DNA from: Podarcis pityusensis
Lineage: Eukaryota
NCBI GenBank assembly: GCA_964106645.2
Contig: OZ067051.1
Length of the DNA: 64,000 nucleotides
Strand: one strand, 5' to 3'
The position numbers were made by a program, and so were the translations under genes. Shown here piece after piece: positions 4,755 through 53,339 of the stretch; the first letter of the stretch is position 1, and each line of letters starts with the position of its first letter. The notes beneath the pieces were generated by a model. The model was not told the DNA's origin, searched no databases, and was given only the letters and a program-made list of their open reading frames with translations.

Positions 4755-4862
4755 CTGGAAGGAAGAGAAAGCAGGGGCTCAGGCAAGCAGGCAGGCCGAG
4801 GGGCTGCCCCACAGATGCATACGCTGCCTTGCAGTGTGGAAATAGGTAGGTGGCTCAGCACA

Positions 4863-8535: not shown

Positions 8536-8580
8536 TTATGCAAGTGGTTGAAAGCCAGGTGCAAAAACACTGTTGTAGAG

Positions 8581-13950: not shown

Positions 13951-14192
13951 CAGGGGTAGACAACCTAAGACCCAGGGGCTGGATGCGGCCCAATTGCCTT
14001 CTCAATCCGGCCCGTGGACGGTCCGGGAATCAGCGTGTTTTTACATGAGTAGAATGTGTGCTTTTATTTAAAATGCATCTCTGGGTTATTTGTATGGCAT
14101 AGGAATTCGTTCATTCCCCCCCAAATCCAGCCCACCACATGGTCTGAGGGATGGTGGACCGGCCCATGGCTGAAAAAGGTTGCTGACCCCTG
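13951..14192. mobile_element. hAT-type MITE
   Basis: CAGGGGTAGACAACC...GGTTGCTGACCCCTG; perfect 8-bp TSD GTCTGGAG; homologous to 41448-41704. Confidence 0.88.
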
Positions 14193-15627
14193 GTCTGGAG
14201 AGACCCATAGAAAACTGACTTGGGGTTTGTAAGCAAACTGTATTTGGGTGGGCTGGCTGTTTCTCTGCATCAATCCCATGTGGCAGCAGAGGATCTTAGG
14301 CACTTCAAAACTCCAGCTATGCTCAACTTGTAGACAAATTCAAATATTACAAAACATCACAAATCTCTTGTGACCTCCTTCCAAAGGCAACCAGGCACAG
14401 GAAACCACTGATTCCGTGGAACATGCCACCAGACAAGCAGGAGTGAGCATAGCCATTGGACATTTAGAATGGAAAGATAGACGAGGAGAGCGTGGGAATT
14501 TCCCATCCAAATAAGTCCATAAGTAGTCCATAAACAAGGGGAATATGGGATTTCTTTACCTATGTGAATACTCAGCAGGGATAGTTCTCAATCCTACAGT
14601 TTTGGAACTGTATAATTGGAGATATATATTGATGGTGAGGCATTTCTACAACGAGGCAAAGAAGGAAAACAAGGGCCCCCCTCTTTTGGCTGAAGAAGGT
14701 AGTAAAAATGTTCCAAATAAATGATTCAGTGTAGTGTGTCATTAATATTTTCTCTCAGCCTACAATAACTGTGGTTGTATGAGATATGGTGAATGCTGAC
14801 ATTCACATGAAGGTTAACAGCCCTCAGGCAAATGCTGGGAATGTTTGCAAACTCCGAAATGCTGGCGATTGTTTGAAAAACATAGGATTGAATAATGAAT
14901 TATGTGTGTGTGAGTGAGTGTGCCATTCACAAGACCTATCTTGGACTGTTAGTTTTTAAGTGCTACAAGACTCTTTATTGTTTTTGTGGCAACAGACTAG
15001 CACAGCTGCTCTTCTGAAATGTGAATTTAACATTTGCTACGTTTGAGGTTTTCAGTTTAACATATGCAGATACCACTGGAGGGTGGTTCATTAGGGTGAG
15101 CCTTGGTCTGCCCTGTCCAGCCCTGCCTTCTGACAACAAGTCCAGAGGGTAGCAATGCCTATCAAGTTCCTCCTCTATAGCCCCAGTTCTGCCCTTGTAG
15201 AACTCAGCAGTTCTACACTGAACTCACGCATTGGCTCTGGCTCCCCCTACTGTTGACCTCCTTCCTTAAACTCTACCAGACTCTGTGAACAACAGCCACC
15301 CACTGACTGATACATAAATATATGTGATAACTTCAGCAGTGTCACCCAACCACATAACACACTGTAAAGCAGTGGGAGTCTGATCACTCCCAAATCATCT
15401 GCTTCTTGTTTTTAATAGCTCCCATGTGGTTCATCGATGCCTTTACAGTTGCAAAGCAGGAGGAGGGCACATTCAAGATCTGTAAAGACTGAAGGCATAA
15501 CTGAAGTTGGGTGAAGCTGCAGCTTGTCTTCATACCCTTGCAGCAGCCTCTGCTGAAGATGCCAAGGGTTATCTCCAAAACAGCAGTGCATCACAGGAAC
15601 ACATCAGACAACCTTCAAGCAGTAAAG

Positions 15628-17539: not shown

Positions 17540-18037
17540 GCTCCCTGAGGCGACGGAGGTTTTGGCGGGAAGTCCCGAGGAGCCGAGCAAGAGGAAACAG
17601 GCTCGGGCCTGGGCCTTCGCGAGCCAGCGCCGAGGGGTACTGGGCCGCACTGAAAGCTGCCCGCCTGGCAAGAGTGGCCGAAGAAGCCGCCGCCGCCCCT
17701 TTACGCTATTTGCCTCTCTTCTTCACTGAGGGAGACGGAGGAGGGGGAAAGAGGCCTTTGCCAGGACCAAAGATGGCGGCGGCCGCGAGAAGGGTAGGCC
17801 GGCTGGTCTCGCGGTTGCCCGCAACCAGCATGGCGGCGCCGGCTTCCTGCGTGCCCGTCTCGCCGCGCGGGCTCCGCCCCGCCCGCCGCCGCCTCAGCCT
17901 GAGCAGCAGCAAGAGGAGGAGGAGGAGGCGCAGCTCCGGCTCCTGGACGGCTGTGCCGCCGGTGAAGCTCCCAGGCGCGGAGGCTGGGCTGCGGCGGCGG
18001 GGATGAGGCGGTGGTAGGCCCGAGGGGAGAGGGCGCC
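17540..18037 (+). promoter_or_regulatory. USP31: USP31 CpG-island promoter / 5'UTR
   Basis: CpG island continuing through exon 1; YY1-type AAGATGGCGGC (17770-17780), RFX X-box-like GTTGCCCGCAAC (17814-17825), GC boxes at ~17874-17885. Confidence 0.8.
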
Positions 18038-18847
18038 ATGTCGGGCCGGGCGAGTGGCGCTGCGGCGGTGGCGGCCCCGGTGCTGCCCGCCGCCGCTTCG
18101 CCGGTGGTGGTGGCGGCGGCGGCCAAGGAGAAGCGCTCCTTCAGCAAGCGGCTGCTCTTCCGGGGCCGGGTGGGCGGCGGCGGCGGGTCCGGCACTGGGG
18201 GCTCGGGCTCCTCCTCCTCCAGGTCGCTGGGCGGATTCATGAGCCGCGTGCTGAAGACGCTCTCGACGCTCTCCCACCTGGGCACCGAGCACGGGCCCGC
18301 CGCCACCACCGCCCGCCACGGACACCCCCCCGGCGGCAGCAGCCTGGGCCGCTGCTTCCAGCCCAGCCCGGAGCCCGAGCCGCCGCCTCCCCCGTCGCCG
18401 CCGCCGCCTCCGCAGCCTCCCGCCACCCAGGAGCTGATCTCGCCGCCGCCACCGCCGCCGCCGCCGGGCTCCTCGGCGGGGTCGCTGCTGCTGCCGGCCG
18501 TGCCCGGCGTGGCGGGGCTGCGCAACCACGGCAACACGTGCTTCATGAACGCCATCCTGCAGTGCCTCAGCAACACCGAGCTCTTCGCCGAGTACCTCGC
18601 CCTCGAGCAGTACCGCGCCGCCAACGCCGCAGAAGCCGGGGACGGAGGCAGAGGCGCCGGCGGAGAGGAGGAGGAGGAGGAAGAGGAGGGCGGCGGCGGC
18701 GAGAGGGACGTGCCAGCCGTGGCCCCCGCCCGCCCGCCGGAGCCCGCCCCGGACAACTGCAAGGGCGAGGTGACGGAGCAGCTGTCGCACCTAGTGCGGG
18801 CCCTCTGGACGCTCGAGTATACGCCGCAGCACAGCCGGGAGTTCAAG
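18038..18847 (+). CDS. USP31: USP31 exon 1 (N-terminus and Cys box GLRNHGNTCFMNAILQCL)
   Basis: gccATG; KEKRSFSKRL, FMSRVLKTLSTLSHL and GEVTEQLSHLVRALWTLEYTPQHS match USP31; AAG|GTGAGG donor; 810 nt. Confidence 0.96.
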
Positions 18848-20577
18848 GTGAGGGGCTCTCCCGCTCCTCTGCCGGCTCCTAGCAGCCCCTCCGCAGGGGA
18901 AGCATCTAATCTGGCCAGGGTCCCCTTTTCAGAAGCACCAAGAGCAGCAGCAGGGCCAGTGCATCGAGACCTGCAGCACCTAAAAATAATCATCAGATGC
19001 CCTGCTTGCTTGGAAGGCATGCTGCGCTGTGACCTGGGTGCTCTTGGCAAAGGTGTCATTCCCTTGGGTTAGAGCTGACATTAAGACTGTAAGCTCTTTG
19101 GGGCAGGGAGGTGCATTGGTTGTTCTTAGGAAGCTCCCTCACTGGCACTGATGGCAGTGTGTTAATGATTTGTGGTGGCTTCCAGAGGTGGTATATTCCA
19201 GCATCACAGGTACAGGTGCTGAGATCTGGCGGTGGAAAAGTGATACCTTTGTTTAATTCCTAGTTCAAGTCGGCACCCCAACTTAAGGTGCCTCTGTCAA
19301 TCAGTACTTGCATAGATGATTTTTTTCTTTCTACATATAGGCTGACTGAAAGGAAACCTCTGAGCAGATGCAGAGTGCCATTTGTGATAACTGTAGTTTT
19401 CCTTCTGTTCCAGGGGTGAGCTCTGAGGATTCTTGACTCATATTAAGACCGGCAGTGAATGAAGAATAGCAGAAAATACCTGTTTGGAATCTCCTTCAGG
19501 TGTTATCTGCAATTCTTATTGAGTGAGATGAGAGAAACAGTTCCGTTTACATCGTTTAAATATGTTACTTGTTCCATAGGAGGGTATAAAGTTTGGAGTT
19601 GCACAGAGAATTCTGTCATACCGAATAGAGGAGGGGCTACTTCCTAGGATCATAAGAGATGGACTCCCACCCAGCTTAGTTCAGTAATCTTCACCATTCC
19701 TGGCATATGGGTGGCCATCCACTGCTTAAATGCCTCAAGTGTGGGAGAACCCACCAGCACTACCTGTGCTGCTCCCCAGTAGCCTTTTGTGTTGCAATAT
19801 TTCTTTTAATGCTCAGTCAAAATTTGCTTCCTTGCAGTTTCTACCTATCAGTTCTAGTCCTGCTCTGTGGAGCAACAAAGAATGAGTTTGTTCCATCTTC
19901 TTCATGGCAGAATGTTCAGGTATTTAGCACTGGTATGATTCTTAGTTAAACACACGTGTTTCTGGTAGTTCATAGACAGTAGCCCTGATTCCCTCTCTGC
20001 ATAGAACCTTGGAAGCAGCCCAGTGCTGAATTAGGTTATTGGTTCATCTCACTCAGTATTGTCTACACTGACTGGCAGTGGCTCTTCTGGGTCTAAGGCA
20101 GGAGACGTTCTCAGCCCTACCTGGAGATGCTGGGGGTTGAACTGAAGAGGTCCTTCTGCATGCTAACCAGATGTTCTACCACCTAGCTGCAACCTTTCCC
20201 CAAAGGCACAGCATCCTCTGCAGGCTTTGGTCTTGGCTGTGTAGAGAGCTGTGACTAGTGAGTTAGTTCATGCCCAAGATCCCTAAAAACTTGTGTGGAA
20301 AGATAAGTTTGGTGTGTGTATCAGAAAGAAAGAGACATACATGCTAGTCAGTACTCCTGGCTTATGAATAACACCTGATAAATGATGCTTCATAGTTGAC
20401 TCTTATCATACCAAGACCCTGCCTATGACTGTGATGCCTACTCTGCCTTCTTTTAATATTGGGTGATGGAAAAACTGCAACTTCACACAGCTCTGTTGTC
20501 AATTGGGTTTTGTTTTTTTGAGGCAAAGCTGGTGGCTGCCTTGTTAACTCAAATTGGAGACAAGTAATTGTATAGGA

Positions 20578-38120: not shown

Positions 38121-38795
38121 GTATGGCGCCCCTTGCCTGGCTGTCAGCATCACTTTGCTCTGTGTCTGGTTTGCCAGGGGCAGACACACTCGCAGGGCTC
38201 CTGGGACTAGGAGGAAGCCTCTTTGTTCTCTACGGAGCATAACCACCTTCTGGGATGAACATCTGTTTCATTCCCTGATTCAGCCTGCCCGCCCTGGGGT
38301 TTGTGAGTTGGGTGCTTTTCCTTGGGGCTGAGAAACAAGGTCTTGGGGCAGCCGGTGTGGGGCTCAGCTTTCCAGTGTGGCCTCTAGGGCCCAGTTCTCA
38401 ACAGCTGAGGAGGTGAATCTGTTTCTCAGCTGCCATGTGATTTAATGCTTCTTCAATGAAAAGTGAATAAATCTCTGCACCCGGAAGAATAGCTTGTCGG
38501 AGAGAAGGCATGACTACAAACCTGCCTGACATCTTTCTTTCTTTTTTAATATTGGGTGGAAGAGCATATTCACCTTATGGGAGCCAGATCTTAATCTTGC
38601 TCATTGCAAGAGGTGGAGGTGGGGGAATGGAAGGACCAGTGATATCGTCACATTTTGCTTGAATGCTGTGTTTTTTCCAGGCTCTAATTGCAAGGGAATT
38701 TGGGAGTTGGGTGGCCTCTGATTATCCCTTCTGCGGAGAGGGAGGCTGCTGTACTGTGTCCTAAATGAGGCTTCTGTTCCCTTGTTGTCTGGCAG

Positions 38796-38888
38796 GTCAT
38801 CCTTGACGTGTCCTCATTGCCAGAAGCAGAGTAATACCTTCGACCCGTTCCTGTGCATCTCTCTGCCAATCCCCCTGCCTCACACACG
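38796..38888 (+). CDS. USP31: USP31 exon 4 (SSLTCPHCQKQSNTFDPFLCISLPIPLPHT)
   Basis: First CxxC of the USP zinc finger; gcAG/GTATGT; 93 nt. Confidence 0.96.
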
Positions 38889-39691
38889 GTATGTGTCCAT
38901 TGCCATGGGAAAAGGAGTGGGGAGGAAGAGTGTACCTTGCTCACTCATTGGCGCTTTCCTGCACACCAGGGATGTGGAACCTCTGGTTCAGGTGGCCAAA
39001 TTATTTCCTGTATAGCTCACAGATTCTTTAATAGTCTTGAGGACCCACAGTTAAATTTGGGGGTGAGGGTGGGGAAGGAACCCTCACTGTTTAAATGTGG
39101 ATTGAGCTCAAACTATAGCAATATACTGCAAATCTGCTGCTTGGTGCTGAGCGAGCAAGCAAGGGAGGGGTGTTTCCAGTTCCCCTTCCCCGCTGTCCTC
39201 GAACCCTTATAAGAATCTGCTGCAGGAGAGGGACTGTGAGCAACATCAGGGCATGCGGTATTTCTAGGACCAGGGTGAAACTCTGATTTTTGCCATTGGA
39301 TGCTGGATGTTGTTTACATAACCTTGTTATATTTATAATAGTGAAAAGTGTTTCTTTTTTGTATGTAATTAAATTTGCTGTTGTGTTTTGCTTTGTTATT
39401 ATGAAATTGTTTTGCCCTCTTTGGTTTTAAAGTGCTTTCCTGTTTTCTTTGTTGGAAGCCGCTTTGAGTATCATTTTTGGTGTGTGTGGAAAAGCGGCAT
39501 ATGAATTAATGAATAAGCTAAAGTTCTTGCAGCCTGTGGAGAGTGAGCTGCAGCTGGGCCCAGAATGTCCATGTGTGCATTAGTCCTGTTCCACCCCACT
39601 CACCTTGCTGAACCTCAGCAGATTTGCCTCCTCGTCCAACTCCCAAATGTCTGCCCTCCAAAAAGATGTGCCCTTGTTGTCCTCTCTGCAG

Positions 39692-39827
39692 GCCGTTGTA
39701 CATCACAGTGGTGTACCGAGGGAAGTGCTCCCACTGCATGCGCATCGGGGTGGCTGTGCCTCTGTCTGGAACAGTGGCGCGACTGAGAGAAGCTGTGTCC
39801 AGGGAAACCAAAATCCCCACCAAACAG
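39692..39827 (+). CDS. USP31: USP31 exon 5 (PLYITVVYRGKCSHCMRIGVAVPLSGTVARLREAVSRETKIPTKQ)
   Basis: gcAG/GTGAAT; 136 nt; phase consistent. Confidence 0.95.
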
Positions 39828-40207
39828 GTGAATGTTGGTCCTGCCAGACATCAGGGTTGAGGACATTGGGGCTGATTCTTGCAGCTGTACCACACTCACT
39901 GTTCAGCATCCAGTGACCTAAAAATGTACCAAATACCTCTTCCTGTGCAGTGTTTATGATGCGTGGCTGAGGGTGTCTCAGTGATCCCTTTTATTTCTGC
40001 ATGATTGTAGAAACCCTCAAAGTGACTGGATCCAGTTTCCCACCCCTGAGTGGAAGGATTTTGGGAAGCTGGGAAAAGCTAGGCGGGCTCTGGGCACCTT
40101 GTATTATTTTGATCTATCCAGGGGGTGTATGTAGCATTTGGGAGTCTTGCTACTTGGCCTCGGCAATGCTGCAACACAGGTACTTATTACATTCTGGCCT
40201 CCTGCAG

Positions 40208-40352
40208 ATCGTGCTCACTGAGATGTACTATGATGGGTTCCACCGCTCCTTCTCTGATTTGGATGACCTCGACACAGTGCAGGAGAGCGACTGCATCTTT
40301 GCCTTTGAGACCCCGGAGATCTACCGGCCTGAGGGGATCCTAAGCCAGAGAG
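40208..40352 (+). CDS. USP31: USP31 exon 6 (IVLTEMYYDGFHRSF...PEGILSQR)
   Basis: gcAG/GTATGT; 145 nt. Confidence 0.95.
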
Positions 40353-40674
40353 GTATGTTGGGCTGCTAGGCCATCTGTATGGCATGTGCCTGATTCCTGC
40401 AAGAGTTTTCCTTTTGCCTCCCAACCTTTCCGGAGATGTTTAACATGACTGCTCTTGGAAGGGAAGAAAAAACCTTGTTAAGTTGTGCTTTCCCCACTCC
40501 CCCGTGTTACTTCTGTTCCACGTAGGCTGAGAAAAGGCCACCTAAGAGCACGAAACATTTACCAGTGACCTCCATGTTATCTGGACTTGGCCATCAGATG
40601 GCTTCACCAGATGTGCCCCTGTATCCCTCTCTGCGGCGTGTTGACCATGAAGTCTCTTCTTCACTCTCTTTCAG

Positions 40675-40861
40675 GAATCCACGTGAACAGCAATCTGAAT
40701 CACTTGAAATATGGCCTTGACCATCCTCGGGCAGCTCCGTATACCCAAGGGAGGCTGGAGAACTCCAATACCAGGGTGGCGGCGGCAGCGGCGGCGGTAG
40801 CAAGCGATAAGCTGGTGGTGTTGGTTTGCAACCGGGCTTGTACTGGACAGCAAGGGAAGAG
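40675..40861 (+). CDS. USP31: USP31 exon 7 (GIHVNSNLNHLKYGLD...VCNRACTGQQGKR)
   Basis: ttcAG/GTAACC; 187 nt. Confidence 0.93.
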
Positions 40862-41447
40862 GTAACCGTCGCCTCGCAGGCAAGAGGCCCCCTCTAGTTC
40901 TGGTTTTGAGAGGTGTGCAGTGAACTCTGCAATTGTTTTATTTCGGCTTTTGCTTATTTAACCTGGCTTTTTAAATACTCTTTTCTACAGTATCAATTTT
41001 TAAACAGTACCATAATAATTAAAAAGTTGAATCTCTTTTGTTTTTGATGTTGTAATTCACTTTGGGCTATCAGATTAAAGTGACCTCTGTCAGATCAACA
41101 GCCAAATTATGAGTCTGTCTAGAATCATTTTCCTTGTTCCCATGGCGAGCCAAGAAGGATAAAGGGTGTCACTTGCACCCTGCTGGTGGTCTGATTGTGC
41201 TCCAACATAAAACTTTTTAGACCACATTGCAGGGATCTCTCATCAATTGTATTGAAGTCTTGTTTCTTCCTGGGCTCATTTCGAGGTGCCTCCCTGTAAA
41301 GCCCTACATTGTTTGGTGTTGTTTGTTTGTAAAGTTTGTAAAGTTTACTTATCTATTTATTTCATTTTCTAATGTATATAAAACAAAGAGAACAATTAAA
41401 CAGATGAGAATTAAAAGATGAAAAACAACACTGCACATGGGTTAAAA

Positions 41448-41704
41448 CATGAGTAGGCATACTAAGGCCCAGGGGCCGGATCTGGCCCAATCGCCTTCTA
41501 AATCCGGCCTGCGGACGGTCTGGGAATCAGTGTGTTTTTACATGAGTAGAATGTGTGCTTTTATTTAAAATACATCTCTGGGTTATTGGTGGGGCATAGG
41601 AATTTGTTCATTCCCCCCCCCCCAAAAAAAAATATAGTCCGGCCCCCCACAAGGTCTGAGGGACAGTGGACCAGTCCCCTGCTGAAAAAGTTTGCTGACC
41701 CCTG
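41448..41704. mobile_element. hAT-type MITE
   Basis: 8-bp TSD GGTTAAAA; homologous to 13951-14192. Confidence 0.85.
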
Positions 41705-41958
41705 GGTTAAAATAACAAAAACCAAATAAAGACTACCATGAACGTTGGATTACTTTGATTGTTGTTAGCCGCCCTGAGCCCAGCCTCAGCTGGGGAGGGC
41801 GGGATATAAATAAAATTTATTATTATTATTATTATTACCAGTATTATCAGATTATCAAGTACAGTTCTAGATTTGCCAAGGTTGTGACGAGGGCTGTCTT
41901 GAAAATGATGGTTCCACTGCATATGTTATAAAGGAATGCCAAAACATTTAAAAGCAAT

Positions 41959-43716
41959 TTTGTTGTTGTTGTTTAGTCGTTTAGTCGTGTCCGACTCTTC
42001 GTGACCCCATGGACCAGAGCACGCCAGGCACTCCTGTCTTCCACTGCCTCCCGCAGTTTGGTCAGACTCATGTTTGTGGCTTCGAGAACACTGTCCAACC
42101 ATCTCGTCCTCTGTCGTCCCCTTCTCCTTGTGCCCTCAATCTTTCCCAACATCAGGGTCTTTTCCAGGGAGTCTTCTCTTCTCATGAGGTGGCCAAAGTA
42201 TTGGATCAGGATCTGTCCTTCCAGTGAGCACTCAGGGCTGATTTCCTTAAGAATGGAGAGGTTTGATCTTCTTGCAGTCCATGGGACTCTCAAGAGTCTC
42301 CTCCAGCACCATAATTCAAAAGCATCAATTCTTCGGCGATCAGCCTTCTTTATGGTCCAGCTCTCACTTCCATACATCACTACTGGGAAAACCATGGCTT
42401 TAACTATACGGACCTTTGTTGGCAAGGTGATGTTTCTGCTTTTTAATATGCTGTCTAGGTTTGCCATCGCCTTTCTCCCAAGGAGCAGGCGTCTTTTAAT
42501 TTCGTGACTGCTGTCACCATCTGCAGTGATCATGGAGCCCAAAAAAGTAAAATCTCTCACTGCCTCCATTTCTCCCCCTTCTGTTTGCCAGGAGGTGATG
42601 GGCCCAGTGGCCATGATCTTCGTTTTTTTGATGTTGAGCTTCAGACCATATTTTGCACTCTCCTCTTTCACCCCCATTAAAAGGTTCTTTAATTCCTCTT
42701 CACTTTCTGCCATCAAGGTTGTATCATCTGCATATCTGAGGTTGTTGATATTTCTTCCGGCGATCTTAATTCCGGCTTGGGATTCATCCAGCCCAGCCTT
42801 TCGCATGATGAATTCTGCATATAAGTTAAATAAGCAGGGAGACAATATACAGCCTTGCCGTACTCCTTTCCCAATTTTGAACCAATCAGTTGTTCCATAT
42901 CCAGTTCTAACTGTAGCTTCTTGTCCCACATAGAGATTTCTCAGGAGACAGATGAGGTGATCAGGCACTCCCATTTCTTTAAGAACTTGCCATAGTTTGC
43001 TGTGGTCGACACAGTCAAAGGCTTTTGCATAGTCAATGAAGCAGAAGTATATGTCTTTCTGGAACTCTCTAGCTTTCTCCATAATCCAGCGCATGTTTGC
43101 AATTTGGTCTCTGGTTCCTCTGCCCCTTCGAAATCCAGCTTGCACTTCTGGGAGTTCTCAGTCCACATACTGCTTAAGCCTGCCTTGTAGAATTTTAAGC
43201 ATAACCTTGCTAGCGTGTGAAATGAGTGCAATTGTGCGGTAGTTAGAGCATTCTTTGACACTGCCCTTCTTGGGGATTGGGATATAGACTGATCTTCTCC
43301 AATCCTCTGGCCACTGCTGAGTTTTCCAAATTTGCTGGCATATTGAGTGTAGCACCTTAACAGCATCATCTTTTAAAATTTTAAATAGTTCAGCTGGAAT
43401 ATCATCACTTCCACTGGCCTTGTTATTAGCAGTGCTTTCTAAGGCCCATTTGACTTCACTCTCCAGGATGTCTGGCTCAAGGTCAGCAACCACACTACCT
43501 GGGGTATATGAGACATCCATTTCTTTCTGGTATAGTTCCTCTGTGTATTCTTGCCACCTCTTCTTGATGTCTTCTGCTTCTGTTAGGTCCTTTCCACTTT
43601 TGTCTTTTATTATGGTAATCTTTGTACGAAATGTTCATTTCATATCTCCAATTTTGTTGAACAGATCTCTGGTTTTTCCCATTCTATTGTTTTCCTCTAT
43701 TTCTTTGCATTGCTCT
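41959..43716 (-). mobile_element. BovB (RTE) LINE, 3' half: RT domain and (CAA)n tail
   Basis: QAGFRRGRGTRDQI, FIDYAKAFDCVDH, GVRQGCILSP, LRYADD, ...VHGVTKSRTRLND; one frame broken by two TGA stops (43635, 43158). Confidence 0.96.
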
Positions 43717-45115
43717 GTGGCCATTGCCTTGCCGTGGCGAAGGGGCTTGAATAACTCAGAGAAGCTATGAGCTATGCCGTGCAGGGCCACCCAAGATGGA
43801 CAGGTCATAGTGGAGAGTTTTGACCAAACGTGATCCACCTGGAGCAGGAACTGGCAAGCCACTCCAGTATCCTTGCCAAGAAAACTCCATGGACAAAGAC
43901 AACAGGCATATGAAAGTTATGACGCTGGAAGATGAGCCCCTCAGGTCGGAAGGCGTCCAACATGCTACTGAGGAAGAGCGGAGGACAAGTACAAGTAGAT
44001 TCAGAGCTGATGAAGCGGCTGGGCCAAAGCCGAAAGGACGCTCAGTTGTGGATATGCCTGGAAGCGAAAGGAAAGTCCAATGCTGTAAAGAAAAATATTG
44101 CATAGGAACCTGGAATGTAAGAACCATGAACCTGGGTAAGTTGGATGTGGTCAAAAATGAGATGGCAAGAATAAATATTGACATCCTGGGCATCAGTGAA
44201 CTAAAATTGACGGGAATGGGCGAATTCAGTTCGGATGACCATCATATCTACTACTGTGGGCAAGAATCCCGTAAAAGAAATGGAATGGCCCTCATAGTCA
44301 ACAAAAGAGTGGCGAAAGCTGTACTGGGATGCAATCTCAAAAATGATAGAATGATCTCGATACGAATCCAAGGCAGACCTTTTAACATCACAGTAATCCA
44401 AGTTTATGCACCAACCACTGGTGCTGAAGAAACTGAAATTGAGCAATACTATGAAGACTTACAACACCTTATAGAAATGAAACCAAAGAAGGATGTTCTT
44501 CTCATTATAGGGGATTGGAATGCTAAAGTAGGGAGTCAAGAGATAAAAGGAACAACTGGCAAGTTTGGCCTTGGAGTTCAAAACGAAGCAGGGCAAAGGC
44601 TAATAGAGTTCTGCCAAGAGAACAAGCTGGTCATCACAAACACTCTTTTCCAACAACACAAGAGACGACTCTACACATGGACATCACCAGATGGGCAGCA
44701 TCGAAATCAGATTGATTATATTCTCTGCAGCCAAAGATGGAGAAGCTCTGTACAGTCAGCAAAAACAAGACCTGGAGCTGATTGTGGCTCAGATCATCAG
44801 CTTCTTATAGCAAAATTCAAGCTTAAACTGAAGAAAGTAGGAAAAACCACTGGGCCGGTAACATACAATCTAAGTCAAATCCCTTATGAATACACAGTGG
44901 AAGTGAGGAACAGGTTTAAGGATTTAGATTTGGTGGACAGAGTGCCTGAAGAACTATGGATGGAGGCTTGTAACATTATACAGGAGGCAGCAACTAAAAC
45001 CATCCCAGCGAAAAGGAAATGCAAGAAAGCAAAGTGGCTGTCCAACGAGGCCTTACAAATAGCGGGGGAGAGAAGGCAAGCAAAATGCGAGGGAGATAGT
45101 GAAAGATACAGGAAA
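43717..45115 (+). mobile_element. BovB (RTE) LINE, inverted 5' half: 5'UTR and APE endonuclease
   Basis: IGTWNV, DILGISE, IQVYAPT, GDWNAKVG, QIDYIL, CGSDH motifs in an uninterrupted ORF, on the opposite strand to the RT half. Confidence 0.96.
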
Positions 45116-45952
45116 TTAAAAGCAATATAGAGTACAATTTAGAAACTAATCCATTTCTCCCTCTACCCATTGTGTTTAATAAATTTCCAAATTCTGTTAA
45201 GGGCTTTGGAACTTATGTTTTTACATGTACTTCTATAATAAAGCTATAAATTAGATTAAAATAAAGCCAGTTTGTGTTAAGGTTTGACAAAGTTAATTTT
45301 ATTTGGTTAATAGATATGTTGTTTACAAGAACTGTATACCAATAATGTGTCTAAACTCAAGCCCTAAACTTAAGACCGAGATAGTGGAAAGATTTACCTC
45401 CTCCTGTATGAAGCTGCCTACAGGTAGAATTCATCTTTTGAGACCCTGTTTTGTATCCCACCATCAAAGGAGGCTTAATTGGTGGGAACAAAAGACGGAG
45501 CCTTTTCTGTGTCTCCTCTGAGTAGGCCTAATGTTGGCTGTAACCCCAGTATTTCCCCCCTCAGTGTGATGACAGCCCTTCAGGGATTTGAAGAGAGCTT
45601 CAGAAACCTGGATGAGCCTTTTCTCTGGGCTAAATGTACATAGTTCCTCTGGCCATATGTTTACAAATAAATATAAAGGCGATAGCTTCTCTCCCAACTG
45701 AAATTAGACAGGCAGCCTCTTTGCTGAACAAAGACTTTCTTATTCCAGCAGGCTTATTAAGGTTTCCGTTTGGCTTCATACAATTCTTTGATTAACTTCT
45801 ATTGCTTTATTCTCTGCTGTTTATTTTTTATGTGCTCTGCTTAGAAATGCTAACGATTAAGCGACATAGAAATGCCTTAAGTAAATAAAATTTTAAATGG
45901 TGGGAGTCAGAAAGAGCTGCTGGTCCCTTCATGGCCTTGCTCTTATCTGCAG

Positions 45953-46064
45953 ATTTGGCCAGCCCTTTGTGCTCCATCTGGAGAAGACGATTCCTTGGGA
46001 CCTACTGCAGAAGGAGATCCTGGAGAAGATGCAGTATTACCTGCGGCCCTCAGCCTGTGTCCAG
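45953..46064 (+). CDS. USP31: USP31 exon 8 (FGQPFVLHLEKTIPWDLLQKEILEKMQYYLRPSACVQ)
   Basis: gcAG/GTAAGG; 112 nt. Confidence 0.95.
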
Positions 46065-46518
46065 GTAAGGCTGCCTGGAACTGGGCCCTCTTTACACCTT
46101 GCTTTGTTTTTCAGCATGTGTATGTGCATTTGAGAGCTGCTGCTGTAAAAAGCCAGTCTAATTGTGGTGCTAAGTAAATAGCAATATCGCTGCTTACATT
46201 GCTGGCTGCTCAATAAACTCATTGTCAAGAGTGCAGCTGGTAGTGCCTTGTGAAGTTCCTACTCCTCTTGCTTTCCATCTGCTGGAGAGCGAAGAGAGGA
46301 AGAGAAAACTCCCCTCTCAGGGTGGATGAGCCAGGCTGATGATACGTTTCTTCTGGCCCATGTTGCACTGGAGGAGCATGTGCCAAAGGGCAGGTGGGCA
46401 CACCTGTTGGGGAAAGGGAAAGCCAGCTGTGTGCCCACCTAGGAGTCTCTTTTCCTACCTGTCCTCTCCTCACCATCTCCCCCTCACAACTGCTCTTCTC
46501 ATTTCCCCTGCCATGTAG

Positions 46519-46613
46519 GTTTGTCCGTTCAGCTTGCGAGTGGTCAGCGCTGTGGGCATAACTTACCTGTTACCTCAGGAAGAGAGGCCTCTGTGCCACC
46601 TAATGGTGGAGCG
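46519..46613 (+). CDS. USP31: USP31 exon 9 (VCPFSLRVVSAVGITYLLPQEERPLCHLMVER)
   Basis: gtAG/GTGAGT; 95 nt; translated by hand. Confidence 0.93.
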
Positions 46614-47240
46614 GTGAGTGTGGTTTCCTTGTTTGTGAAGGATACGGGGCCTCAGGCCTTATGGATTTGCTTATTTTACTGGGGTGGGGAAGGGGACGGC
46701 ATCTCACCTGCCGAGAGCCGCTTCAGTCTAACAGGCACCAATGGAGCTTCTGGGCTCTTCTGCAGGCCTCGCTTCTCCTAGAAGCTGGCTGCTCTCAAGC
46801 CGTTTCTGCCTGGATTGCTGCTTGTCCTGGAGAGAGAACCATAGAATTGTAGAGTTGGAAGGGTCATCTAGTCCAAGGGTCATCTAGTCCAAGGGATATT
46901 TTGCCCAACATGGGGCTCAAACCCACAACCCTGCGATTCATAGTCTCATGCTCTACCACGAAGGAGCAGAATAAACTAGAGGGAAGCTTTCCTGTGATGT
47001 CATCTCTTGAACTGTTCCTATGGAGTGGCTATTGCTTCTTTAGTAGGCTGGTAAAGGTGGCACCCTTTGGTCTGAAGGAGAAGCCCCTGAACTCAGCTGG
47101 TTCCTGTTGTGGGGGATCTTGATGGGTTTGGCAGGTTCTTTATGGGGGTGAGAGTTAGAGAGAAAGAAAGATGCTTGTGACTAGCTTACGCACTGCTGCT
47201 TTTTGAAAGACTTTGAGTGATTGTGGTGTGTTTTCTGCAG

Positions 47241-47318
47241 GGCCCTGAAGTCATGTGGGCAAGGCGGAACTCCTCACGTGAAGCTGGTTGTGGAGTGGGA
47301 CAAGGAGACAAAAGACTA
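47241..47318 (+). CDS. USP31: USP31 exon 10 (ALKSCGQGGTPHVKLVVEWDKETKD)
   Basis: gcAG/GTAAGC; 78 nt; translated by hand. Confidence 0.93.
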
Positions 47319-47953
47319 GTAAGCATCATGTTCCATTTGGGACTTTGGGGTGGGCTCCTGGCAGGCTGTGGTTTGAAACTCCCTTTCCCACATGACTGCT
47401 GCTCTAGGGACTTCCTGCTGCTCTAGGTTTGCCTCATGTGTGTGCTTAGTTGCTTCCCAGAACAGGGCTGGGCATTCCTCAAAGCTTGTGGGATGCACTT
47501 TTACCATAACCCTGAGTTTGTTCAACATGAGCCGAGTGCAGAAGGCATCCTCTGCAAAAGACAGAACTCTGAGGCGAGGAATTTTTTATTGCTTGTATGT
47601 TTTTACAACATAGCGGAACTGAACAGAACTCACAGTCTCTCTACATGCAAATCCACTCATGGTTCCTCCAAGTTCTCGTCATGTATGTAGTATTAATTGG
47701 GGTAAGGAGTCATTTTGCTGCTCCTATTGTTAAACAGTGGAGTCAGAAACCTTTTCTGATCTAATTGCCTGGGGATTTCACGGTAAATTCCGATCTATCT
47801 TCTGCACACTCAGTAGATTAATTTACAACCTGCCAGTCACCTGCCCAAGAGTGCTTCCCAAGAAGGTTGGCAGGCAGCCTCACCCCACTTGTGTGTTTTG
47901 CTAGTCAGCCTGCAAGCACAGGAATTGTTAAATGCTGCATTTCCTTGTTGCAG

Positions 47954-48083
47954 TTTGTTCGTCAACACAGAGGATGAATATATCCCGGATGCTGAGAGTG
48001 TCCGCCAGCAGAGGGAGCTCCACCACCAGCCTCAGTCCTGCACCTTATCACAATGTTTCCAGCTCTACACCAAAGAGGAACAG
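47954..48083 (+). CDS. USP31: USP31 exon 11 (LFVNTEDEYIPDAESV...CTLSQCFQLYTKEEQ)
   Basis: gcAG/GTGAGA; 130 nt. Confidence 0.95.
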
Positions 48084-48733
48084 GTGAGAGATTCAGGGAC
48101 CTGTCAGTAGCAGCACAGGAAGTTGGACCCATTCAGCTCGGCATTGTCTATGCTGGTTAGCAGCAGCTATCCAGGGTTTCAGGCAGGGGTCTCTCCCAGC
48201 CTTCTTTGGAGATGCTACTACCGGAGATTGAACCTGGGATATCTGTGTACTAAGCAGGTGCTCTACTGTTATGGCTCTTCCCCAAATATCCCTTCCTGGA
48301 TATGGCCAGGAGGTCCCTCGTTGCGTCATGAGTGGTCAGAGAGACCCTCGTAGTTCTGTGTGCCTTCAAAGGCCGCCTCTTCCATGTGTGATTGGTCTGC
48401 TTTGGCTTTCTGTCTCCTAAAAGTGTGGCAGGCACATGTTGGGCTGGGAGCTGGTCATGGCACAGCTGCTTTGCCTGCTGTTGTTCATTGTATAAAACAC
48501 ACAGTTGTCTCATAGGAATACTTGTGGAATACAACTAGAATGGAGTATATTGAGGCGATAACTAAACATGTTGCTGTGGGGTCTTATGATGCAGGGCAAG
48601 AAGCATTTCTTATGTTTATCTTCTTCCTTTATAAAGAGTGGATGTTCATGGCATATGCTAGGGGTGTGTGTGTGTGCGTGCGTATGTGTGTGTGCCTATC
48701 TGTCTAATAGCACCCTCCTCTCTTTGCTGCTAG

Positions 48734-48853
48734 CTGGCCCCGGACGATGCATGGCGTTGCCCCCACTGTAAGCAGCTGCAGCAAGGAAGCATCACGCTGA
48801 GCCTTTGGACTTTGCCTGACGTCCTCATCATTCACCTGAAGCGCTTTCGACAG
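48734..48853 (+). CDS. USP31: USP31 exon 12 (LAPDDAWRCPHCKQLQQGSITLSLWTLPDVLIIHLKRFRQ)
   Basis: Second CxxC and the LPxxLxIHLKRF box; ctAG/GTGAAA; 120 nt. Confidence 0.96.
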
Positions 48854-49186
48854 GTGAAAGGAGGCTTGCTTGCTGGGCTGGAGGGAACTCAGGAGCCAGG
48901 GCTCTGCTTGGATTACTGCAGTGGCCCAGTGATTCCTTAGTCATGTGGGCTGTTTTCATGCAGGGGCATTGTGGCTTCCTCCGCTGTGAGGAGAGCCCTG
49001 TCTGATCAACTAAGAGGGCCAGCCTTGCAGGTGCTGAACTCCTCCTCTTTGGCATGGTTTCATTCTTGCCTTTGCCCAAGCAGCCTCTGGGGCTGGAGGG
49101 GAGTTGTGTGTGCTCGGTGCTGATGTGGCGCCTCCAGCACCACACTTCTCTGTGCTGGTTGCAACCTGCATTTCCCCTTTAAACAG

Positions 49187-49412
49187 GAAGGAGACAGAAG
49201 GATGAAGCTTCAGAACATGGTCAGGTTCCCTCTGATTGGCCTGGACATGACGCCGCATGTGGTCAAGAGAAGCCAGAGCAGCTGGAGCCTGCCGTCTCAC
49301 TGGTCCCCCTGGAGGCGCCCTTACGGCCTGGGAAGAGACCCAGAAGACTTCGTCTACGACTTGTATGCTGTGTGCAATCACCATGGCACCATGCAGGGCG
49401 GGCACTACACAG
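49187..49412 (+). CDS. USP31: USP31 exon 13 (EGDRRMKLQNMVRFP...YDLYAVCNHHGTMQGGHYT)
   Basis: His box; acAG/GTGACT; 226 nt. Confidence 0.96.
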
Positions 49413-49823
49413 GTGACTGGGCTGCGCTGCCGGTTTGGGCTCTGCTCACTGCCATGCTGCTCCTGCCTTGCACCCTCCATGACTTGCTCTGCTGACAAGG
49501 ATGTTAACAAGTGGGCAGATGGCCAATGGCTCAGAATGCCTTTGCCTGCTCAGCTGAGCCTCTCCAGCAGCCCCCCTCTCGTAGTGGTGGTGCACTTCCT
49601 TAAGGGTCTTTTTACATGGTGGCCTTAGGGGGCAAAACATGCTGCCCCCCCCAGCCCTCAGCACAGTCTAGCAGTTTAATTCTTTCCTATCTTTTTGGGG
49701 TGGTGGGGTCTTAAGAGAGCCATGACTGGGCAACAGAGACCCCGGCATGTTCCGGCTGCTGGCCCAGCAGGGCTCCCTCGTGCTCACCTCCCCCCTAACT
49801 AACTCTGGCACCTTCTCTCGCAG

Positions 49824-49982
49824 CCTATTGCAAGAACTCCATCGATGGCCTGTGGTACTGCTTCGACGACAGTGAGGTTCAGCAGCTGGCTGAGAACGAG
49901 GTGTGCAAGCAGACGGCTTACATCCTCTTCTACCAGAGGCGGACAGCCATTCCCTCCTGGTCGGCCAACAGCTCTGTGGCAG
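49824..49982 (+). CDS. USP31: USP31 exon 14 (AYCKNSIDGLWYCFDDSEV...AYILFYQRRTAIPSWSANSSVA)
   Basis: WYxFDD and AYILFY USP motifs; gcAG/GTAATG; 159 nt. Confidence 0.96.
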
Positions 49983-50159
49983 GTAATGGCCTGGAGTAGC
50001 AGCTAGTTTTGTAGCTTCCACAGAAACACCAGAAGAGCCTGGCGGCAACTGGGCCAGACCCAAGAGGGCCCACCTGTATCCCACTGTGGCCAACCAGGTG
50101 CCTTCCCTGAGAAGGGTCCACAGGCAAGAGCAAGAGGACACCAGGGAAAGATGTCCTCT

Positions 50160-50430
50160 CCTGCTGCTGGAAACTGGGGTTCTGGTTCTGAAGGTAGCTA
50201 TGGAGACTAGTAGCCATATTGGTAGCCTCATTCTCCTCCATGAATTTGTCCAATCCCCACTTTAAAGGCATCAAGTTAGTGGCCATCTTTTTCTCCTGTG
50301 GTAGAAAATTCCATAATTTAGTTATGTGCCGTGTGAAGAAAAAGTTGTTCTCTTGTTTGTACTGAATCTCCCAACGTTCATCTTGACTAAAGGTCCCCCT
50401 TGGGTTCTAGTGTTATGATGAGAGGAAAGC
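50160..50430 (-). mobile_element. CR1 LINE 3' fragment
   Basis: ...MATNLMPLKWGLDKFMEE and GRFSTNKR; similar to 9300-9480. Confidence 0.6.
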
Positions 50431-50465
50431 TTCTTGCTACCCACTTCTTCCTCCTGCTTCCACAG

Positions 50466-50618
50466 GCTCCACCAGCTCCTCTTTGTGTGAGCACTGGGTG
50501 AGTCGACTCCCAGGCAGCAAGCAACCCAGCATTGCCTCTGCGGCTTCCTCCCGGCGCACTTCCCTAGCCTCCCTCTCGGAGTCCGTGGAGCTGATGGGAG
50601 AAAGGAGCGAAGATGACG
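50466..50618 (+). CDS. USP31: USP31 exon 15 (GSTSSSLCEHWVSRLPGS...ERSEDD)
   Basis: cacAG/GTGAGT; 153 nt. Confidence 0.94.
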
Positions 50619-51419
50619 GTGAGTGTGAGGGCTGCATGCAGTTGGCGAGTGGCTCTGCCACACCTCACTTTGAATGTTGATGGCAGGGGATCCCTTGCAG
50701 AGCACTGGGTTCCTCCTCTGCAGCTCAGCCACCCTGAGGGTCACCAGCTTTGCCCGAGGGACTGTGAAGAGGGGTGCTGAGGCAGAAAAACCAGCAGCAA
50801 CAGGGAATTCCTTCCTCCAGAAAATGAGCAGAAACCAGGGAGAAAGGGATGTTGCTGGTATTTTCAGGCCACCGTCTTCACTGCCTTCTTTCTCTCCACA
50901 TCTCAGTGCTGGCATGCGCTAGGTATGTCTGTCCTCTGATGTCTGATGGGAGCAGGTATCCTCTTCTGAGGAGTTTCCCTTTCTCTAGCTTCTACCCCTG
51001 GGTCATCCTTGGCCTTGCAGTGTTCTGCTCAAAGCTGGGAGAGCAATGAGAATGTCTCCTGCAGAATGAACAGCTTCCCAGCACCGTTCCTCAGAGGCTA
51101 GTGGGGAAGTTTCCTGTGACCTTTGTGCTAGCACATCTGTCTCCTGCCAGCAAATGAAAGAGGTGTGGACAGAATTCTTGCTTTTCTGAATTATGGATGC
51201 TGCATTGGGCCCTTGGTATTCAGTACACAGACGGGAGGAACTTACTCTAGATTGATGTTTTGCCTTCTGAGAATTGCTTTGGCTGCTGCTGCCACCCTCA
51301 GTTGTCCCCTGGCAGCAGGGTGTCCTTCAGGGGAGGGTCTCCTGATTTCTCAGCCCATGAAAGAGCTTTGATAGGTTGGCAAGGAAGTTACCATGTTGGC
51401 ACAGTTTCCAGAGCGGGAG

Positions 51420-51421
<2 letters not shown>

Positions 51422-51451
<30 letters not shown>
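51422..51451. repeat. (GT)n microsatellite
   Basis: Direct read; another (CA)n at ~2605-2629. Confidence 0.95.
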
Positions 51452-51453
<2 letters not shown>

Positions 51454-51756
51454 CATTTGTTTTAAAATGTGCACTCTGCTGTTCACTGCATCTGGGTTGC
51501 AAAGCAGCTTGTGACAAAACACAGTATGCAAATTAAAACATCGGAGAATGAAATGTGCTCCCGAAACAAACGCATTGTAGCTTCTTGTATGAAATAGACA
51601 GAGCCACAGAAACTCAACGTATGAAAGCAATTATAAAAGCACGGGGGGGGGGGGGGCGGGAATCAGTGAAATGCGTTTTAGAATGGCTTCCTTGCTTGTG
51701 CATGTGTCCATGCTCTGTTTGTGTATTTGGCTACCATGTTCCTCTGTGCTCCACAG

Positions 51757-53339
51757 GTGGCTTTTCCACCCGCCCCTTTGTGAGGAGTGTCCAGCGCCAG
51801 AGCCTGTCTTCCAGGTCCTCCGTGACCAGCCCCTTGGCCGTGAGCGAGAACGGGATCCGCCCCTCGTGGTCGCTGTCAGCGAAGCTGCAGATGCGCTCCA
51901 GCTCGCCTTCCCGCTTCTCTGGGGACTCTCCGGTTCACAGCTCGGCTTCCACCCTTGAGAGGATTGGGGAGTCTGCGGACGACAAAGTCTCCACCTCATG
52001 CTTTAGCAGCCTGAGGAGTCTCTCTGGAAGCCACATTGAGTCCAGCGAGAGCAGCGGCCGGCAGGAGCACCCCACGGCAGGCAGAGCTCCCCTGGCAGTC
52101 ATGGAGGGCGTCTTCAGAGACGAAGTGCCCGGGCGAAAGCCAGGCTCGGGCACGGACTCCTACAGCAAGACTCTGTCGCAGGCAGACAGGAACTGCCCCG
52201 CCCTGGATCCTTTCGATAACAACAACCAGATCGCTTTTGTTGACCAGAGTGATTCTGTTGAGAGCTCTCCAGTCAAGGAGGGGAGAAGCTTCAGTGGAAT
52301 GTCCAAGGCAGACAGCAGCCCCCAAAAGGCAGCCCACCCCAAAGACACATTGGAGTCAGACAGAAGCTCCAGGAAAGGCAGGACAGATTCCCCAGTGTCC
52401 TGCCAACCGGCAGCCCCGCTCCTTCCCTCCAAGAGTTTGCCGAAGGGGTCCCGGACCAGGAGCAAGCTGAACTCTGGCCGGGCTAGTGGGCGGCACGGCT
52501 CTCCTGCCCCCTCTGGGCAGGGCAGGAAGGAGGCTGGCTCAAAGGGCCAAGAGGCTGCCAGTAACACCTCTGCTGAGCATCAGAAGCAAAAACCTGCTTC
52601 CTCCTCTTCCTCCACCGCGACGAGAAGAAACTCCTCGGGGTCGTCCGTGCGGGGGCACAACACCCCCACGAGCAAAAACAGGACTTCGGAGCACAGCCTC
52701 AGCAGGGAGGGCTCCAAGCTCAGCCTCAGCTCAGACAAGGCTGGCGTTACCACCGGTTCGCGGACGGGCTCTCCACGGATCAGCCAGTCGCGGAGCGAGG
52801 GCAGGAGGCCGGACGGCAAGCACGTGCGCAGCTCCTCCATGGCCAGTCTCCGTTCACCCACCACAGGCGCCCCCCGTGCCAGCCTGAGGAGGGACAGCAA
52901 GTCGGAAGAAAAGGGACTTTCTTTCTTCAAGTCTGCCCTGCGCCAGAAGGAAAGCCGGAGGTCGGCCGACCTAGGCAAGACCACCATGCTGTCGAAAAAG
53001 ATGGCGAGCAGCTCCTCCAAAGCTGCCAGCAAGAACTTGCTTGAGGAGAAGCTGGAGAAGAGTGGTGGTGGTGGCGGCAGCGGCAGCGGCAGCGGCAGCC
53101 TCTCCCAGCCTCCGAATGCCCTCCCCTCGAACGCCACCCCGGCTTCTGCAAAAGACAACCCCTCTCCTGCCAAACACTCGCTGCTCACGAACCGCAAATC
53201 CAAGTCTTCCCAGCTGGAGGCCAACCCCCCGCAGTCGCCCAGCAGTGGCAAGCAGGCAGCCGACAAGGCCTTGCGCAAACTTCCTCCCAGCATGCCCTCC
53301 TCTGCACGGCCGCCGCCAGCCTCTTCGAAATCTCAGTGA
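51757..53339 (+). CDS. USP31: USP31 exon 16 coding part (Ser-rich C-terminal tail, GGFSTRPFVRSVQRQS...SSKSQ*)
   Basis: cacAG acceptor at 51755-51756; open to TGA at 53337-53339; conserved KSEEKGLSFFKSALRQKE; summed CDS is 4251 nt, in frame. Confidence 0.96.

What the first reader, a model, noticed from the sequence alone, without database searches (positions are those of the whole stretch)
41948..45126. Near full-length BovB with an inverted 5' half: twin-priming geometry in an RTE LINE
Seen in sequence: the RT half and (CAA)n tail read on the minus strand (43716 to 41959), while the 5'UTR and APE half read on the plus strand (43717 to 45115). The whole ~3.15 kb is enclosed by one direct repeat, TTAAAAGCAAT (41948-41958 and 45116-45126). 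The plus half stops at ...ERYRKL next to the TSD and the minus half resumes at EQCKEIEENNR. From recalled BovB sequence only ~15-20 codons are missing between them, so the halves look like consecutive parts of one RNA. This is the twin-priming layout TSD-[X to 5' end, inverted]-[X to 3' end]-tail-TSD. Inference: the TSD start (TTA AAA GCA) resembles the expected element continuation L-N-A (TTA AAT GCA), the target/RNA microhomology needed for internal priming. Established: 5' inversions of this kind are documented mainly for mammalian L1. A clean RTE case would suggest BovB machinery, or L1 acting in trans, can also twin-prime in squamates.
Basis: partly seen in the sequence, partly recalled or inferred. 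Interest (0 to 1): 0.8.

Follow-up and report, generated by a model that had tools for sequence, protein, structure and literature searches.

The report
BovB LINE with twin-primed inversion
A 3.2-kb BovB retrotransposon in an intron of a wall lizard's USP31 gene was inserted in one event with its front half flipped, the layout that "twin priming" gives human L1 elements, so this other LINE family can probably do it too.

Summary
TTAAAAGCAAT occurs only twice in the 64-kb window, at 41948-58 and 45116-26. It brackets a BovB whose RT and tail half reads on the minus strand (41959-43715) and whose 5'UTR and endonuclease half reads on the plus strand (about 43722-45115).

Against a collinear full-length BovB of Zootoca vivipara, the two halves are 95.4% and 95.5% identical. 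They are consecutive, with 54 nt (17-18 codons) missing between them. The flipped half reaches to within about 13 nt of the element's normal 5' end.

The CAA-type tail and the 11-bp duplication are typical of BovB and other RTE-clade elements, not of L1.

At X the match is only 7 of 11 (local copies read TTG AAT GCA). The target 11-mer fits the element much better across the other breakpoint, TTAAA[TG]AGCAAT (empirical p about 0.003).

I found a second, independent inverted BovB in the EEF1B2 intron of Podarcis raffonei and P. muralis, and the scan holds four more unchecked notes of the same kind in this genome.

Reads could not confirm the junctions because repeat copies swamped them, and I could not fetch the orthologous site. 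The verdict is a real twin-priming-type insertion by BovB's own machinery: a new member of a known kind, of moderate interest.

The parts
41948..41958 (.). Left copy of the 11-bp target-site duplication, TTAAAAGCAAT. It served as the primer for first-strand cDNA at the tail.
   Evidence: one of only two occurrences in the window. It abuts the tail.
41959..41974 (-). BovB 3' tail. In sense it reads ...GACTAAAC(AAC)4AAA.
   Evidence: same tail as the collinear Zootoca copy L001 (7000-7046).
41959..43715 (-). Direct 3' segment, from Z (GAG of EQCKEIEE) to the tail. It is a single frame of 580 codons covering the RT and the C-terminal part.
   Evidence: matches L001 5282-7045 at 95.5%; one frame. 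RVT_1 at about 42534-43142.
43635..43637 (-). First in-frame stop in the RT half, where the reference has Gly.
43158..43160 (-). Second in-frame stop in the RT half, where the reference has Arg.
42205..42206 (-). Site of a copy-specific 12-nt in-frame deletion. Other copies carry GCCTCAGCTTCA here.
   Evidence: loose ends at 42205/42206 in all four runs. P0003 has IVKLRLQYFG where the window has ILIQYFG.
43716..43724 (.). Inversion junction. These 6-9 nt (TGTGGCCAT) match neither the sequence next to Z nor the normal 5' end (CCCCTTCATGGATCAC). They are filler or heavily mutated.
   Evidence: other copies diverge from the window just before 43725.
43722..45115 (+). Inverted 5' segment: the 5'UTR from about position 14 of the full-length element, and the endonuclease half up to X (...ERYRK).
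   Evidence: matches L001 3834-5227 at 95.4%. Exo_endo_phos at about 44105-44797; open frame from ATG 43889 with no stop.
45116..45126 (.). Right copy of the duplication, TTAAAAGCAAT. Its complement, ATTGCTTTTAA-3', is the overhang inferred to have primed the second cDNA inside the RNA.
   Evidence: BLAST runs 9 nt on into it; it matches the element as TTAAA[TG]AGCAAT at Z.
40659..40862 (+). USP31 coding exon upstream of the host intron (context).
   Evidence: tblastn with USP31 proteins P0128 and P0151.
45951..46067 (+). USP31 coding exon downstream of the host intron (context).

Best explanation
One BovB (RTE-clade LINE) RNA was integrated in a single event by BovB's own endonuclease and reverse transcriptase, with two priming events.

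1. The plus strand was nicked after ...TTAAAAGCAAT. Its 3' end primed cDNA on the CAA-type tail. This cDNA ran to Z (GAG of EQCKE).
2. The other strand was cut 11 nt away. This freed the 3' overhang ATTGCTTTTAA.
3. The overhang annealed inside the same RNA, in the A-rich linker between the endonuclease and RT domains. It primed a second cDNA from X (...ERYRK) almost to the RNA's 5' end.
4. The two cDNA 3' ends were joined, with 6-9 unassigned nucleotides between them. The 54 nt between X and Z were lost.

Shown: the geometry, the single duplication, the consecutive breakpoints, the equal divergence of the halves, the BovB-type tail and duplication length, and the target-to-RNA match. Inferred: the order of events and the annealing step.
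For: - Perfect 11-bp duplication, unique in the window.
- The halves map to L001 3834-5227 and 5282-7045 at 95.4% and 95.5%.
- 17 codons are missing relative to P0002 and P0004.
- The X end abuts the duplication and the 5' end lies at the inner junction.
- The plus half has no 3' end of its own.
- The tail and the leading A of the duplication match the RTE signature (PMC6007223). The 11-bp length matches the RTE peak of 10-12 bp (PMC4245944).
- The target 11-mer matches the X-Z region better than 99.7% of 12,000 window 11-mers.
- The flanks are not BovB-like.
- A second copy with the same geometry has an identical inner junction in two independent Podarcis assemblies.
Against: - No independent read or assembly evidence for the three junctions. 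Read laying was swamped by BovB copies.
- No orthologous empty or filled site could be fetched.
- The best target-to-RNA match lies at Z. Priming there would predict X 48 nt further downstream than observed, so the exact path is unresolved.
- There is no clear microhomology at the inversion junction.
- The priming site was not the best complementary site in the element.
Confidence: 0.85

Rival explanations
1. Post-insertion rearrangement: a near full-length collinear BovB was inserted normally, and its 5' 1.4 kb was inverted later by two breaks or by recombination.
For: The same end product is conceivable. A 6-bp inverted repeat (ATTGCT at 43709-14 and AGCAAT at 45121-26) lies near both breakpoints.
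Against: One break would have to fall exactly between the element's 5' end and the intact 11-bp duplication. Working through recombination between the 6-bp repeats (my own reasoning) predicts that the 54 nt are kept and that TTAAA ends up on the other side, which is not what is seen. A second locus shows the same geometry.
Confidence: 0.05
2. Assembly artefact: the real locus holds a collinear BovB with a 54-nt internal deletion, and the assembler flipped 43717-45115.
For: Flipping the segment back would give an ordinary duplication-flanked, slightly 5'-truncated copy. I obtained no read support for the junctions.
Against: A mis-join would need breakpoints exactly at the duplication boundary and at an internal deletion, with no inverted repeat long enough to confuse an assembler. 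The equivalent structure at EEF1B2 is identical in two independent assemblies. The target-to-RNA match at the breakpoints is not expected from an artefact.
Confidence: 0.05
3. L1 (or another LINE) proteins mobilised the BovB RNA in trans and twin-primed it.
For: 5' inversions are documented mainly for L1.
Against: There is no poly(A) tail; the tail is the BovB (CAA)n microsatellite. The 11-bp duplication lies in the RTE range, not L1's 13-16 bp. The nick site ...GCAAT^ATAGAG is not TTTT^AA. The collinear BovB copy L001 has the same kind of tail and an 11-12-bp duplication.
Confidence: 0.02
4. Variant of the main model: the source RNA already lacked 48 nt in frame, between the repeats TTGAAT and TTAAAT. 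The overhang annealed to TTAAAUGAGCAAU and primed exactly there, so only about 6 nt were lost at the inversion point.
For: The target matches this site 11 of 11 with a 2-nt bulge. The junction ...GGAAA|TTAAA... is what such a source would give. 48 nt keeps the reading frame.
Against: None of the 6 proteins and 4 DNA copies that span the region has this deletion. The sample is very small.
Confidence: 0.1

Closest known systems
Twin-priming 5' inversions of mammalian L1 (Ostertag and Kazazian 2001; census in Kojima 2010, PMC2912911)
   Same: One duplication encloses an inverted 5' segment and a direct 3' segment with the tail. The breakpoints are adjacent in the element, with a small loss between them. 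There is target-to-RNA microhomology at the junction next to the duplication. The duplication is of full length, not shortened.
   Different: The element belongs to the RTE clade: a single ORF and a microsatellite tail instead of poly(A). The duplication is 11 bp rather than 14-16 bp. The host is a lizard. The inverted segment runs almost to the 5' end. There are 6-9 unassigned nucleotides at the inversion junction rather than microhomology.
LINE retrotransposition assays of Yamaguchi et al. 2014 (PMC4245944)
   Same: Their model says a 5' inversion needs a 3' overhang long enough (10-20 nt) to pair with the RNA. An RTE element with an 11-nt overhang fits that prediction.
   Different: In their assays 5' inversion was seen only with human L1 in human cells, plus one Nimb-2_DR insert in chicken cells. 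No RTE element was tested. This is a natural genomic copy, not a de novo insert.
Ordinary BovB copies of lacertid lizards (for example Zootoca vivipara OY735914.1, locus L001)
   Same: About 95% identical over both halves, with the same 5' end region, the same tail and the same duplication length.
   Different: L001 is collinear. The window copy has its first 1.4 kb flipped and lacks 54 nt at the flip point.

Membership tests
Twin-priming-type 5'-inverted LINE insertion | A single target-site duplication encloses both segments. | tested here: met
   11 of 11 identical, and the only two occurrences in 64 kb.
Twin-priming-type 5'-inverted LINE insertion | The direct segment carries the element's normal 3' tail next to one copy of the duplication. 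| tested here: met
   The tail ...AAACAACAACAACAAA abuts 41958.
Twin-priming-type 5'-inverted LINE insertion | The inverted segment's downstream end (X) abuts the other copy of the duplication, and its upstream end lies at the inner junction. | tested here: met
   ...ERYRK ends at 45115 next to 45116-26, and the 5'UTR starts at about 43722.
Twin-priming-type 5'-inverted LINE insertion | X and Z are adjacent in the element (small deletion or duplication). | tested here: met
   54 nt (L001 5228-5281) are missing.
Twin-priming-type 5'-inverted LINE insertion | Microhomology between the target overhang and the RNA at the internal priming site. | tested here: met
   TT strict, TTxAA relaxed and 7 of 11 at X (p about 0.02). 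11 of 11 with a 2-nt bulge at Z (p 0.001-0.003). Which of the two sites was used is unresolved.
Twin-priming-type 5'-inverted LINE insertion | Microhomology at the inversion junction. | tested here: inconclusive
   6-9 nt at 43716-43724 match neither side.
Twin-priming-type 5'-inverted LINE insertion | Both segments derive from one RNA (same subfamily and same age). | tested here: met
   95.4% and 95.5% to L001. Both are closer to L001 and L003 than to the older L002 copy. Only a few reference copies were available.
Twin-priming-type 5'-inverted LINE insertion | Empty orthologous site with one copy of the target, and junctions confirmed by independent reads. | not testable with these tools
   Read laying was swamped by repeat copies. 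Exact look-ups failed. No lacertid USP31 protein fell in the length range, so the locus could not be fetched.
BovB (RTE-clade LINE) | Single ORF with an AP-endonuclease and a reverse transcriptase, about 3.2 kb, short-repeat 3' tail, duplication of 10-12 bp. | tested here: met
   Pfam Exo_endo_phos and RVT_1. 91-95% amino-acid identity to lacertid BovB proteins. 3,157 nt plus the 54 missing. (CAA)n tail and 11-bp duplication.
L1-mediated insertion in trans | Poly(A) tail, duplication of about 13-16 bp, nick at TTTT/AA. | tested here: not met
   (CAA)n tail, 11-bp duplication, nick at GCAAT^ATAGAG.

The most novel reading that the evidence does not exclude
Twin priming is a regular outcome of BovB/RTE integration in lacertid lizards, not a one-off. 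It would be made possible by the 10-12-nt overhang these elements leave, and perhaps favoured at the A-rich linker between the endonuclease and RT domains: both verified cases break within about 100 nt of each other there. That would make this genome a natural test of the overhang-length model for 5' inversion, by comparing BovB with the L2 and CR1 elements of the same genome, which leave short duplications.
Probability: 0.35. Interest if true: 0.6.

Novelty: new member of a known kind. Interest (0 to 1): 0.45.

Why it matters
5' inversion has been treated as largely a property of L1 in human cells. In cell-culture assays other LINEs almost never showed it (PMC4245944). In the paper library I found no report linking twin priming to BovB or RTE insertions. 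One key paper, Ichiyanagi and Okada 2008, is not held there, so prior mention cannot be excluded.

A clean BovB case, with a second one in another gene, shows that an RTE-clade element with a single ORF and an 11-nt overhang can make the same product. This fits the idea that overhang length decides whether the second end can prime on the RNA.

There is also a practical side. Flipped endonuclease halves present an open frame in the opposite orientation to the rest of the element. At EEF1B2 this frame has entered the NCBI gene models of two species.

Tried and rejected
1. Reads. The look-up of sequencing runs found 20 runs under 8 organism labels holding 0.60-0.74 of the words. A genome without this insertion would hold about as many, because many words are shared with other BovB copies. 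Read laying returned about 170,000 tiny unitigs from BovB copies and no locus-specific piece over any junction. One 408-nt contig of run X4 covers 45312 to 45120 and then runs on for 215 nt that do not fit the window.

2. Exact look-ups of 14 ORFs that span the junctions or lie in the flanks: none is in the protein collection.

3. Orthologous locus through USP31. I searched the last-exon ORF alone, by reference. It confirmed USP31 but returned no lacertid protein, because full-length USP31 lies outside the allowed length range.

4. Hairpin bridging of X and Z. The lost 54 nt fold no better than shuffled sequence. Rejected.

5. Target site as an old BovB fragment. The flanks score like shuffled sequence. 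Rejected.

6. A matching target-to-RNA pattern in the second case. Not significant (p 0.52).

7. L003 holds a sense-then-antisense pair of BovB pieces. The order is wrong for twin priming, so I did not count it.
Full report
**What is there**

The window comes from a lacertid lizard. The best protein matches to both halves of the element are BovB proteins of Podarcis muralis (94-95% identity) and Zootoca vivipara (91%).

The 11-mer TTAAAAGCAAT occurs at 41948-41958 and 45116-45126 and nowhere else on either strand of the 64 kb. Between the two copies:
- The minus strand of 41959-43715 reads, in sense, from EQCKEIEENNR through the reverse transcriptase (Pfam RVT_1, E 5e-31) to the 3' end ...GACTAAACGACTAAACAACAACAACAAA.
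- The plus strand of about 43722-45115 reads the 5'UTR and an open frame of 413 codons from ATG 43889. It holds the AP-endonuclease (Exo_endo_phos, E 2.6e-19) and ends at ...ERYRK.

The window holds no other BovB copy.

**Mapping on a collinear copy**

Locus L001 (Zootoca vivipara OY735914.1) carries a collinear full-length BovB at 3821-7046, with its own duplication (A)CTGGCTTTCTG.
- The plus half aligns to L001 3834-5227 at 95.4%.
- The minus half aligns to L001 5282-7045 at 95.5%.

The halves are therefore consecutive pieces of one element and equally diverged. Between them, 54 nt (L001 5228-5281) are missing. At protein level these are the 17 residues NADFQKIARRDKKAFLN.

The normal 5' end is CCCCTTCATGGATCAC/A-TGCC. 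This comes from L001, L003 and the loose ends of other copies in three runs. The window's similarity starts at 43722-43725, about position 14-17 of the element. That leaves 6-9 nt (TGTGGC/CAT) at the inner junction that fit neither side.

The RT half is a single frame of 580 codons with two in-frame stops (43635-37 and 43158-60) and one 12-nt deletion at 42205/6. The endonuclease half has no stop. The copy is old enough to be dead, but it is well preserved.

**Geometry**

Read in the sense of the 3' half, the order is:
1. duplication;
2. the antisense of X back to the 5' end;
3. Z through to the tail;
4. duplication.

This is the product expected if the second target end primed reverse transcription inside the same RNA (the model as described in PMC2912911). 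The plus half has no 3' end of its own, so it cannot be a separate LINE insertion.

**Whose machinery**

The tail is the BovB microsatellite, not poly(A). In element sense the duplication starts with A, as reported for RTE elements with (CAA)n tails (PMC6007223). Its length of 11 bp lies in the RTE peak of 10-12 bp, against 13-15 bp for L1 (PMC4245944, citing Ichiyanagi and Okada 2008). The nick site GCAAT^ATAGAG is not the L1 site. L1 acting in trans is therefore unlikely.

**Microhomology**

Podarcis copies read AGGAAA TTG AAT/AAC GCA at X, and the Zootoca copy reads CTG.
- Against TTGAATGCAGA, the target TTAAAAGCAAT matches 7 of 11, with TT at the junction.
- 54 of 3,207 positions in the element do as well, so this match is weak support.

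I then noticed a better match. The same 11-mer equals the element's TTAAA[TG]AGCAAT, which straddles Z. The window itself keeps GAGCAAT at 43709-15.
- Only 0.3% of 12,000 11-mers drawn from the rest of the window match the 85-nt X-Z region as well.
- The figure is 0.7% for AT-rich 11-mers only, and 0.1% for the 30 nt around Z.

So the overhang ATTGCTTTTAA-3' is significantly complementary to the RNA at the breakpoints, which is what annealing-driven internal priming needs.

Priming at that site would put X 48 nt further downstream than observed. Three explanations remain open:
- The primer's 3' end re-paired at the similar upstream repeat UUGAA.
- The source RNA already lacked those 48 nt in frame. 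This variant is not seen in the 6 proteins and 4 DNA copies that span the region.
- A slippage deletion occurred later.

A hairpin that would bring X and Z together is not supported. The flanks are not a decayed BovB.

**Rivals**

- A later inversion needs a break exactly at the boundary between the duplication and the element's 5' end. Recombination between the 6-bp inverted repeat near the breakpoints predicts a different product.
- An assembly flip needs the same coincidences.

I could not exclude either with reads. The four runs I laid gave only unitigs from the many BovB copies. Exact protein look-ups for junction and flank ORFs failed. The orthologous USP31 intron could not be fetched. 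I searched the last exon alone, by reference, and did not join exons; no lacertid USP31 fell in the length range.

**A second case**

The loci I fetched for reference copies contained another inverted BovB, in an intron of EEF1B2. It is present in Podarcis raffonei (L002 8004-10816) and at the orthologous place in P. muralis (L004 about 8445-11290). In the coordinates of the L001 copy counted from L001 3829:
- The inverted segment covers 124 to about 1456-1468.
- The direct segment covers 1495-3215.
- About 26-38 nt are missing between them.

The inner junction is letter-for-letter the same in the two independent assemblies. In P. muralis the tail is intact and the element is bracketed by AGACAGCTTTT and AGACAACTTTT, which match at 10 of 11. 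This copy is older, at 88-90% identity to L001. Its duplication shows no significant match to the RNA.

Both cases break within about 100 nt of each other, in the A-rich linker between the two domains. However, my retrieval favoured copies that keep the whole endonuclease, so I do not claim a hotspot.

The scan's notebook also lists four other unchecked first-reader notes of BovB or RTE insertions with twin-priming geometry in this genome: s1-717280, s1-736237, s1-725743 and s1-725714.

**Context**

The element lies in the 5.1-kb intron of USP31 between the exons at 40659-40862 and 45951-46067. The endonuclease half is in the sense of the gene.

**Literature**

In cell-culture assays, 5' inversion appeared only with human L1 in human cells, plus one Nimb-2_DR insert in chicken cells. 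The authors tied it to overhangs of 10-20 nt (PMC4245944). About 30% of human and chimpanzee L1 insertions are 5'-inverted (PMC2912911).

No paper in the library links twin priming to BovB or RTE insertions. Ichiyanagi and Okada 2008, and Ostertag and Kazazian 2001, are not held, so an earlier mention cannot be excluded.

**Verdict**

This is a real, single-event, twin-priming-type BovB insertion (confidence 0.85). The mechanism is known, and the LINE clade is new for it. It is probably recurrent in this lineage. Interest is moderate.

Noticed in passing
L002:8004-10816 and L004:8445-11290: A second BovB with twin-priming geometry lies in an intron of EEF1B2 in Podarcis raffonei and P. muralis. 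Its flipped endonuclease half is annotated as a coding exon in the NCBI models 'elongation factor 1-beta isoform X1-X3' (P0005, P0121-P0124). The splice donor GTAGGC sits right at the junction between BovB and the flank.
   Followed up: partly
window 43716-43724 and 42608-42615: The unassigned letters at the inversion junction (TGTGGCCAT) share the 8-mer GTGGCCAT with the RT half of the same element. This could be chance (about 9% expected) or a short templated fill-in.
   Followed up: no
window 45120-45312 (run X4): A 408-nt contig of organism D covers the right flank up to 45120, inside the duplication. It then continues for 215 nt that do not fit the window at 97% identity. It may be an empty site or a different allele in that species.
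   Followed up: no
window 41453-41705 and 13956-14193; L002:15458-15667: Copies of an unnamed interspersed repeat that always ends ...GCTGACCCCTGG. In other genomic copies this end is often followed by TTG repeats (joints 41704 to 41960 in all four runs).
   Followed up: partly
window 18011-19072 and 38794-53339: The whole USP31 gene seems to lie in the window on the plus strand. Exon 1 has the start of the UCH domain at about 18.0-19.07 kb. Further exons lie at 38794, 39681, 40205, 40659, 45951, 46519, 47239, 47955, 48734, 49166, 49820 and 50465. The long serine-rich last exon is at 51756-53339.
   Followed up: partly
L003:11390-11769: A BovB piece in sense (to about RT position 702) is followed directly by an antisense piece (523 to 416). 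This order is the reverse of twin priming. It is probably two copies joined by a deletion.
   Followed up: no
window 41755-41838: A SINE-like fragment (...GCCGCCCTGAGCCCAGCCTCAGCTGGGGAGGGCGGGATATAAATAAA) followed by an (ATT)n microsatellite, about 110 nt left of the BovB.
   Followed up: no
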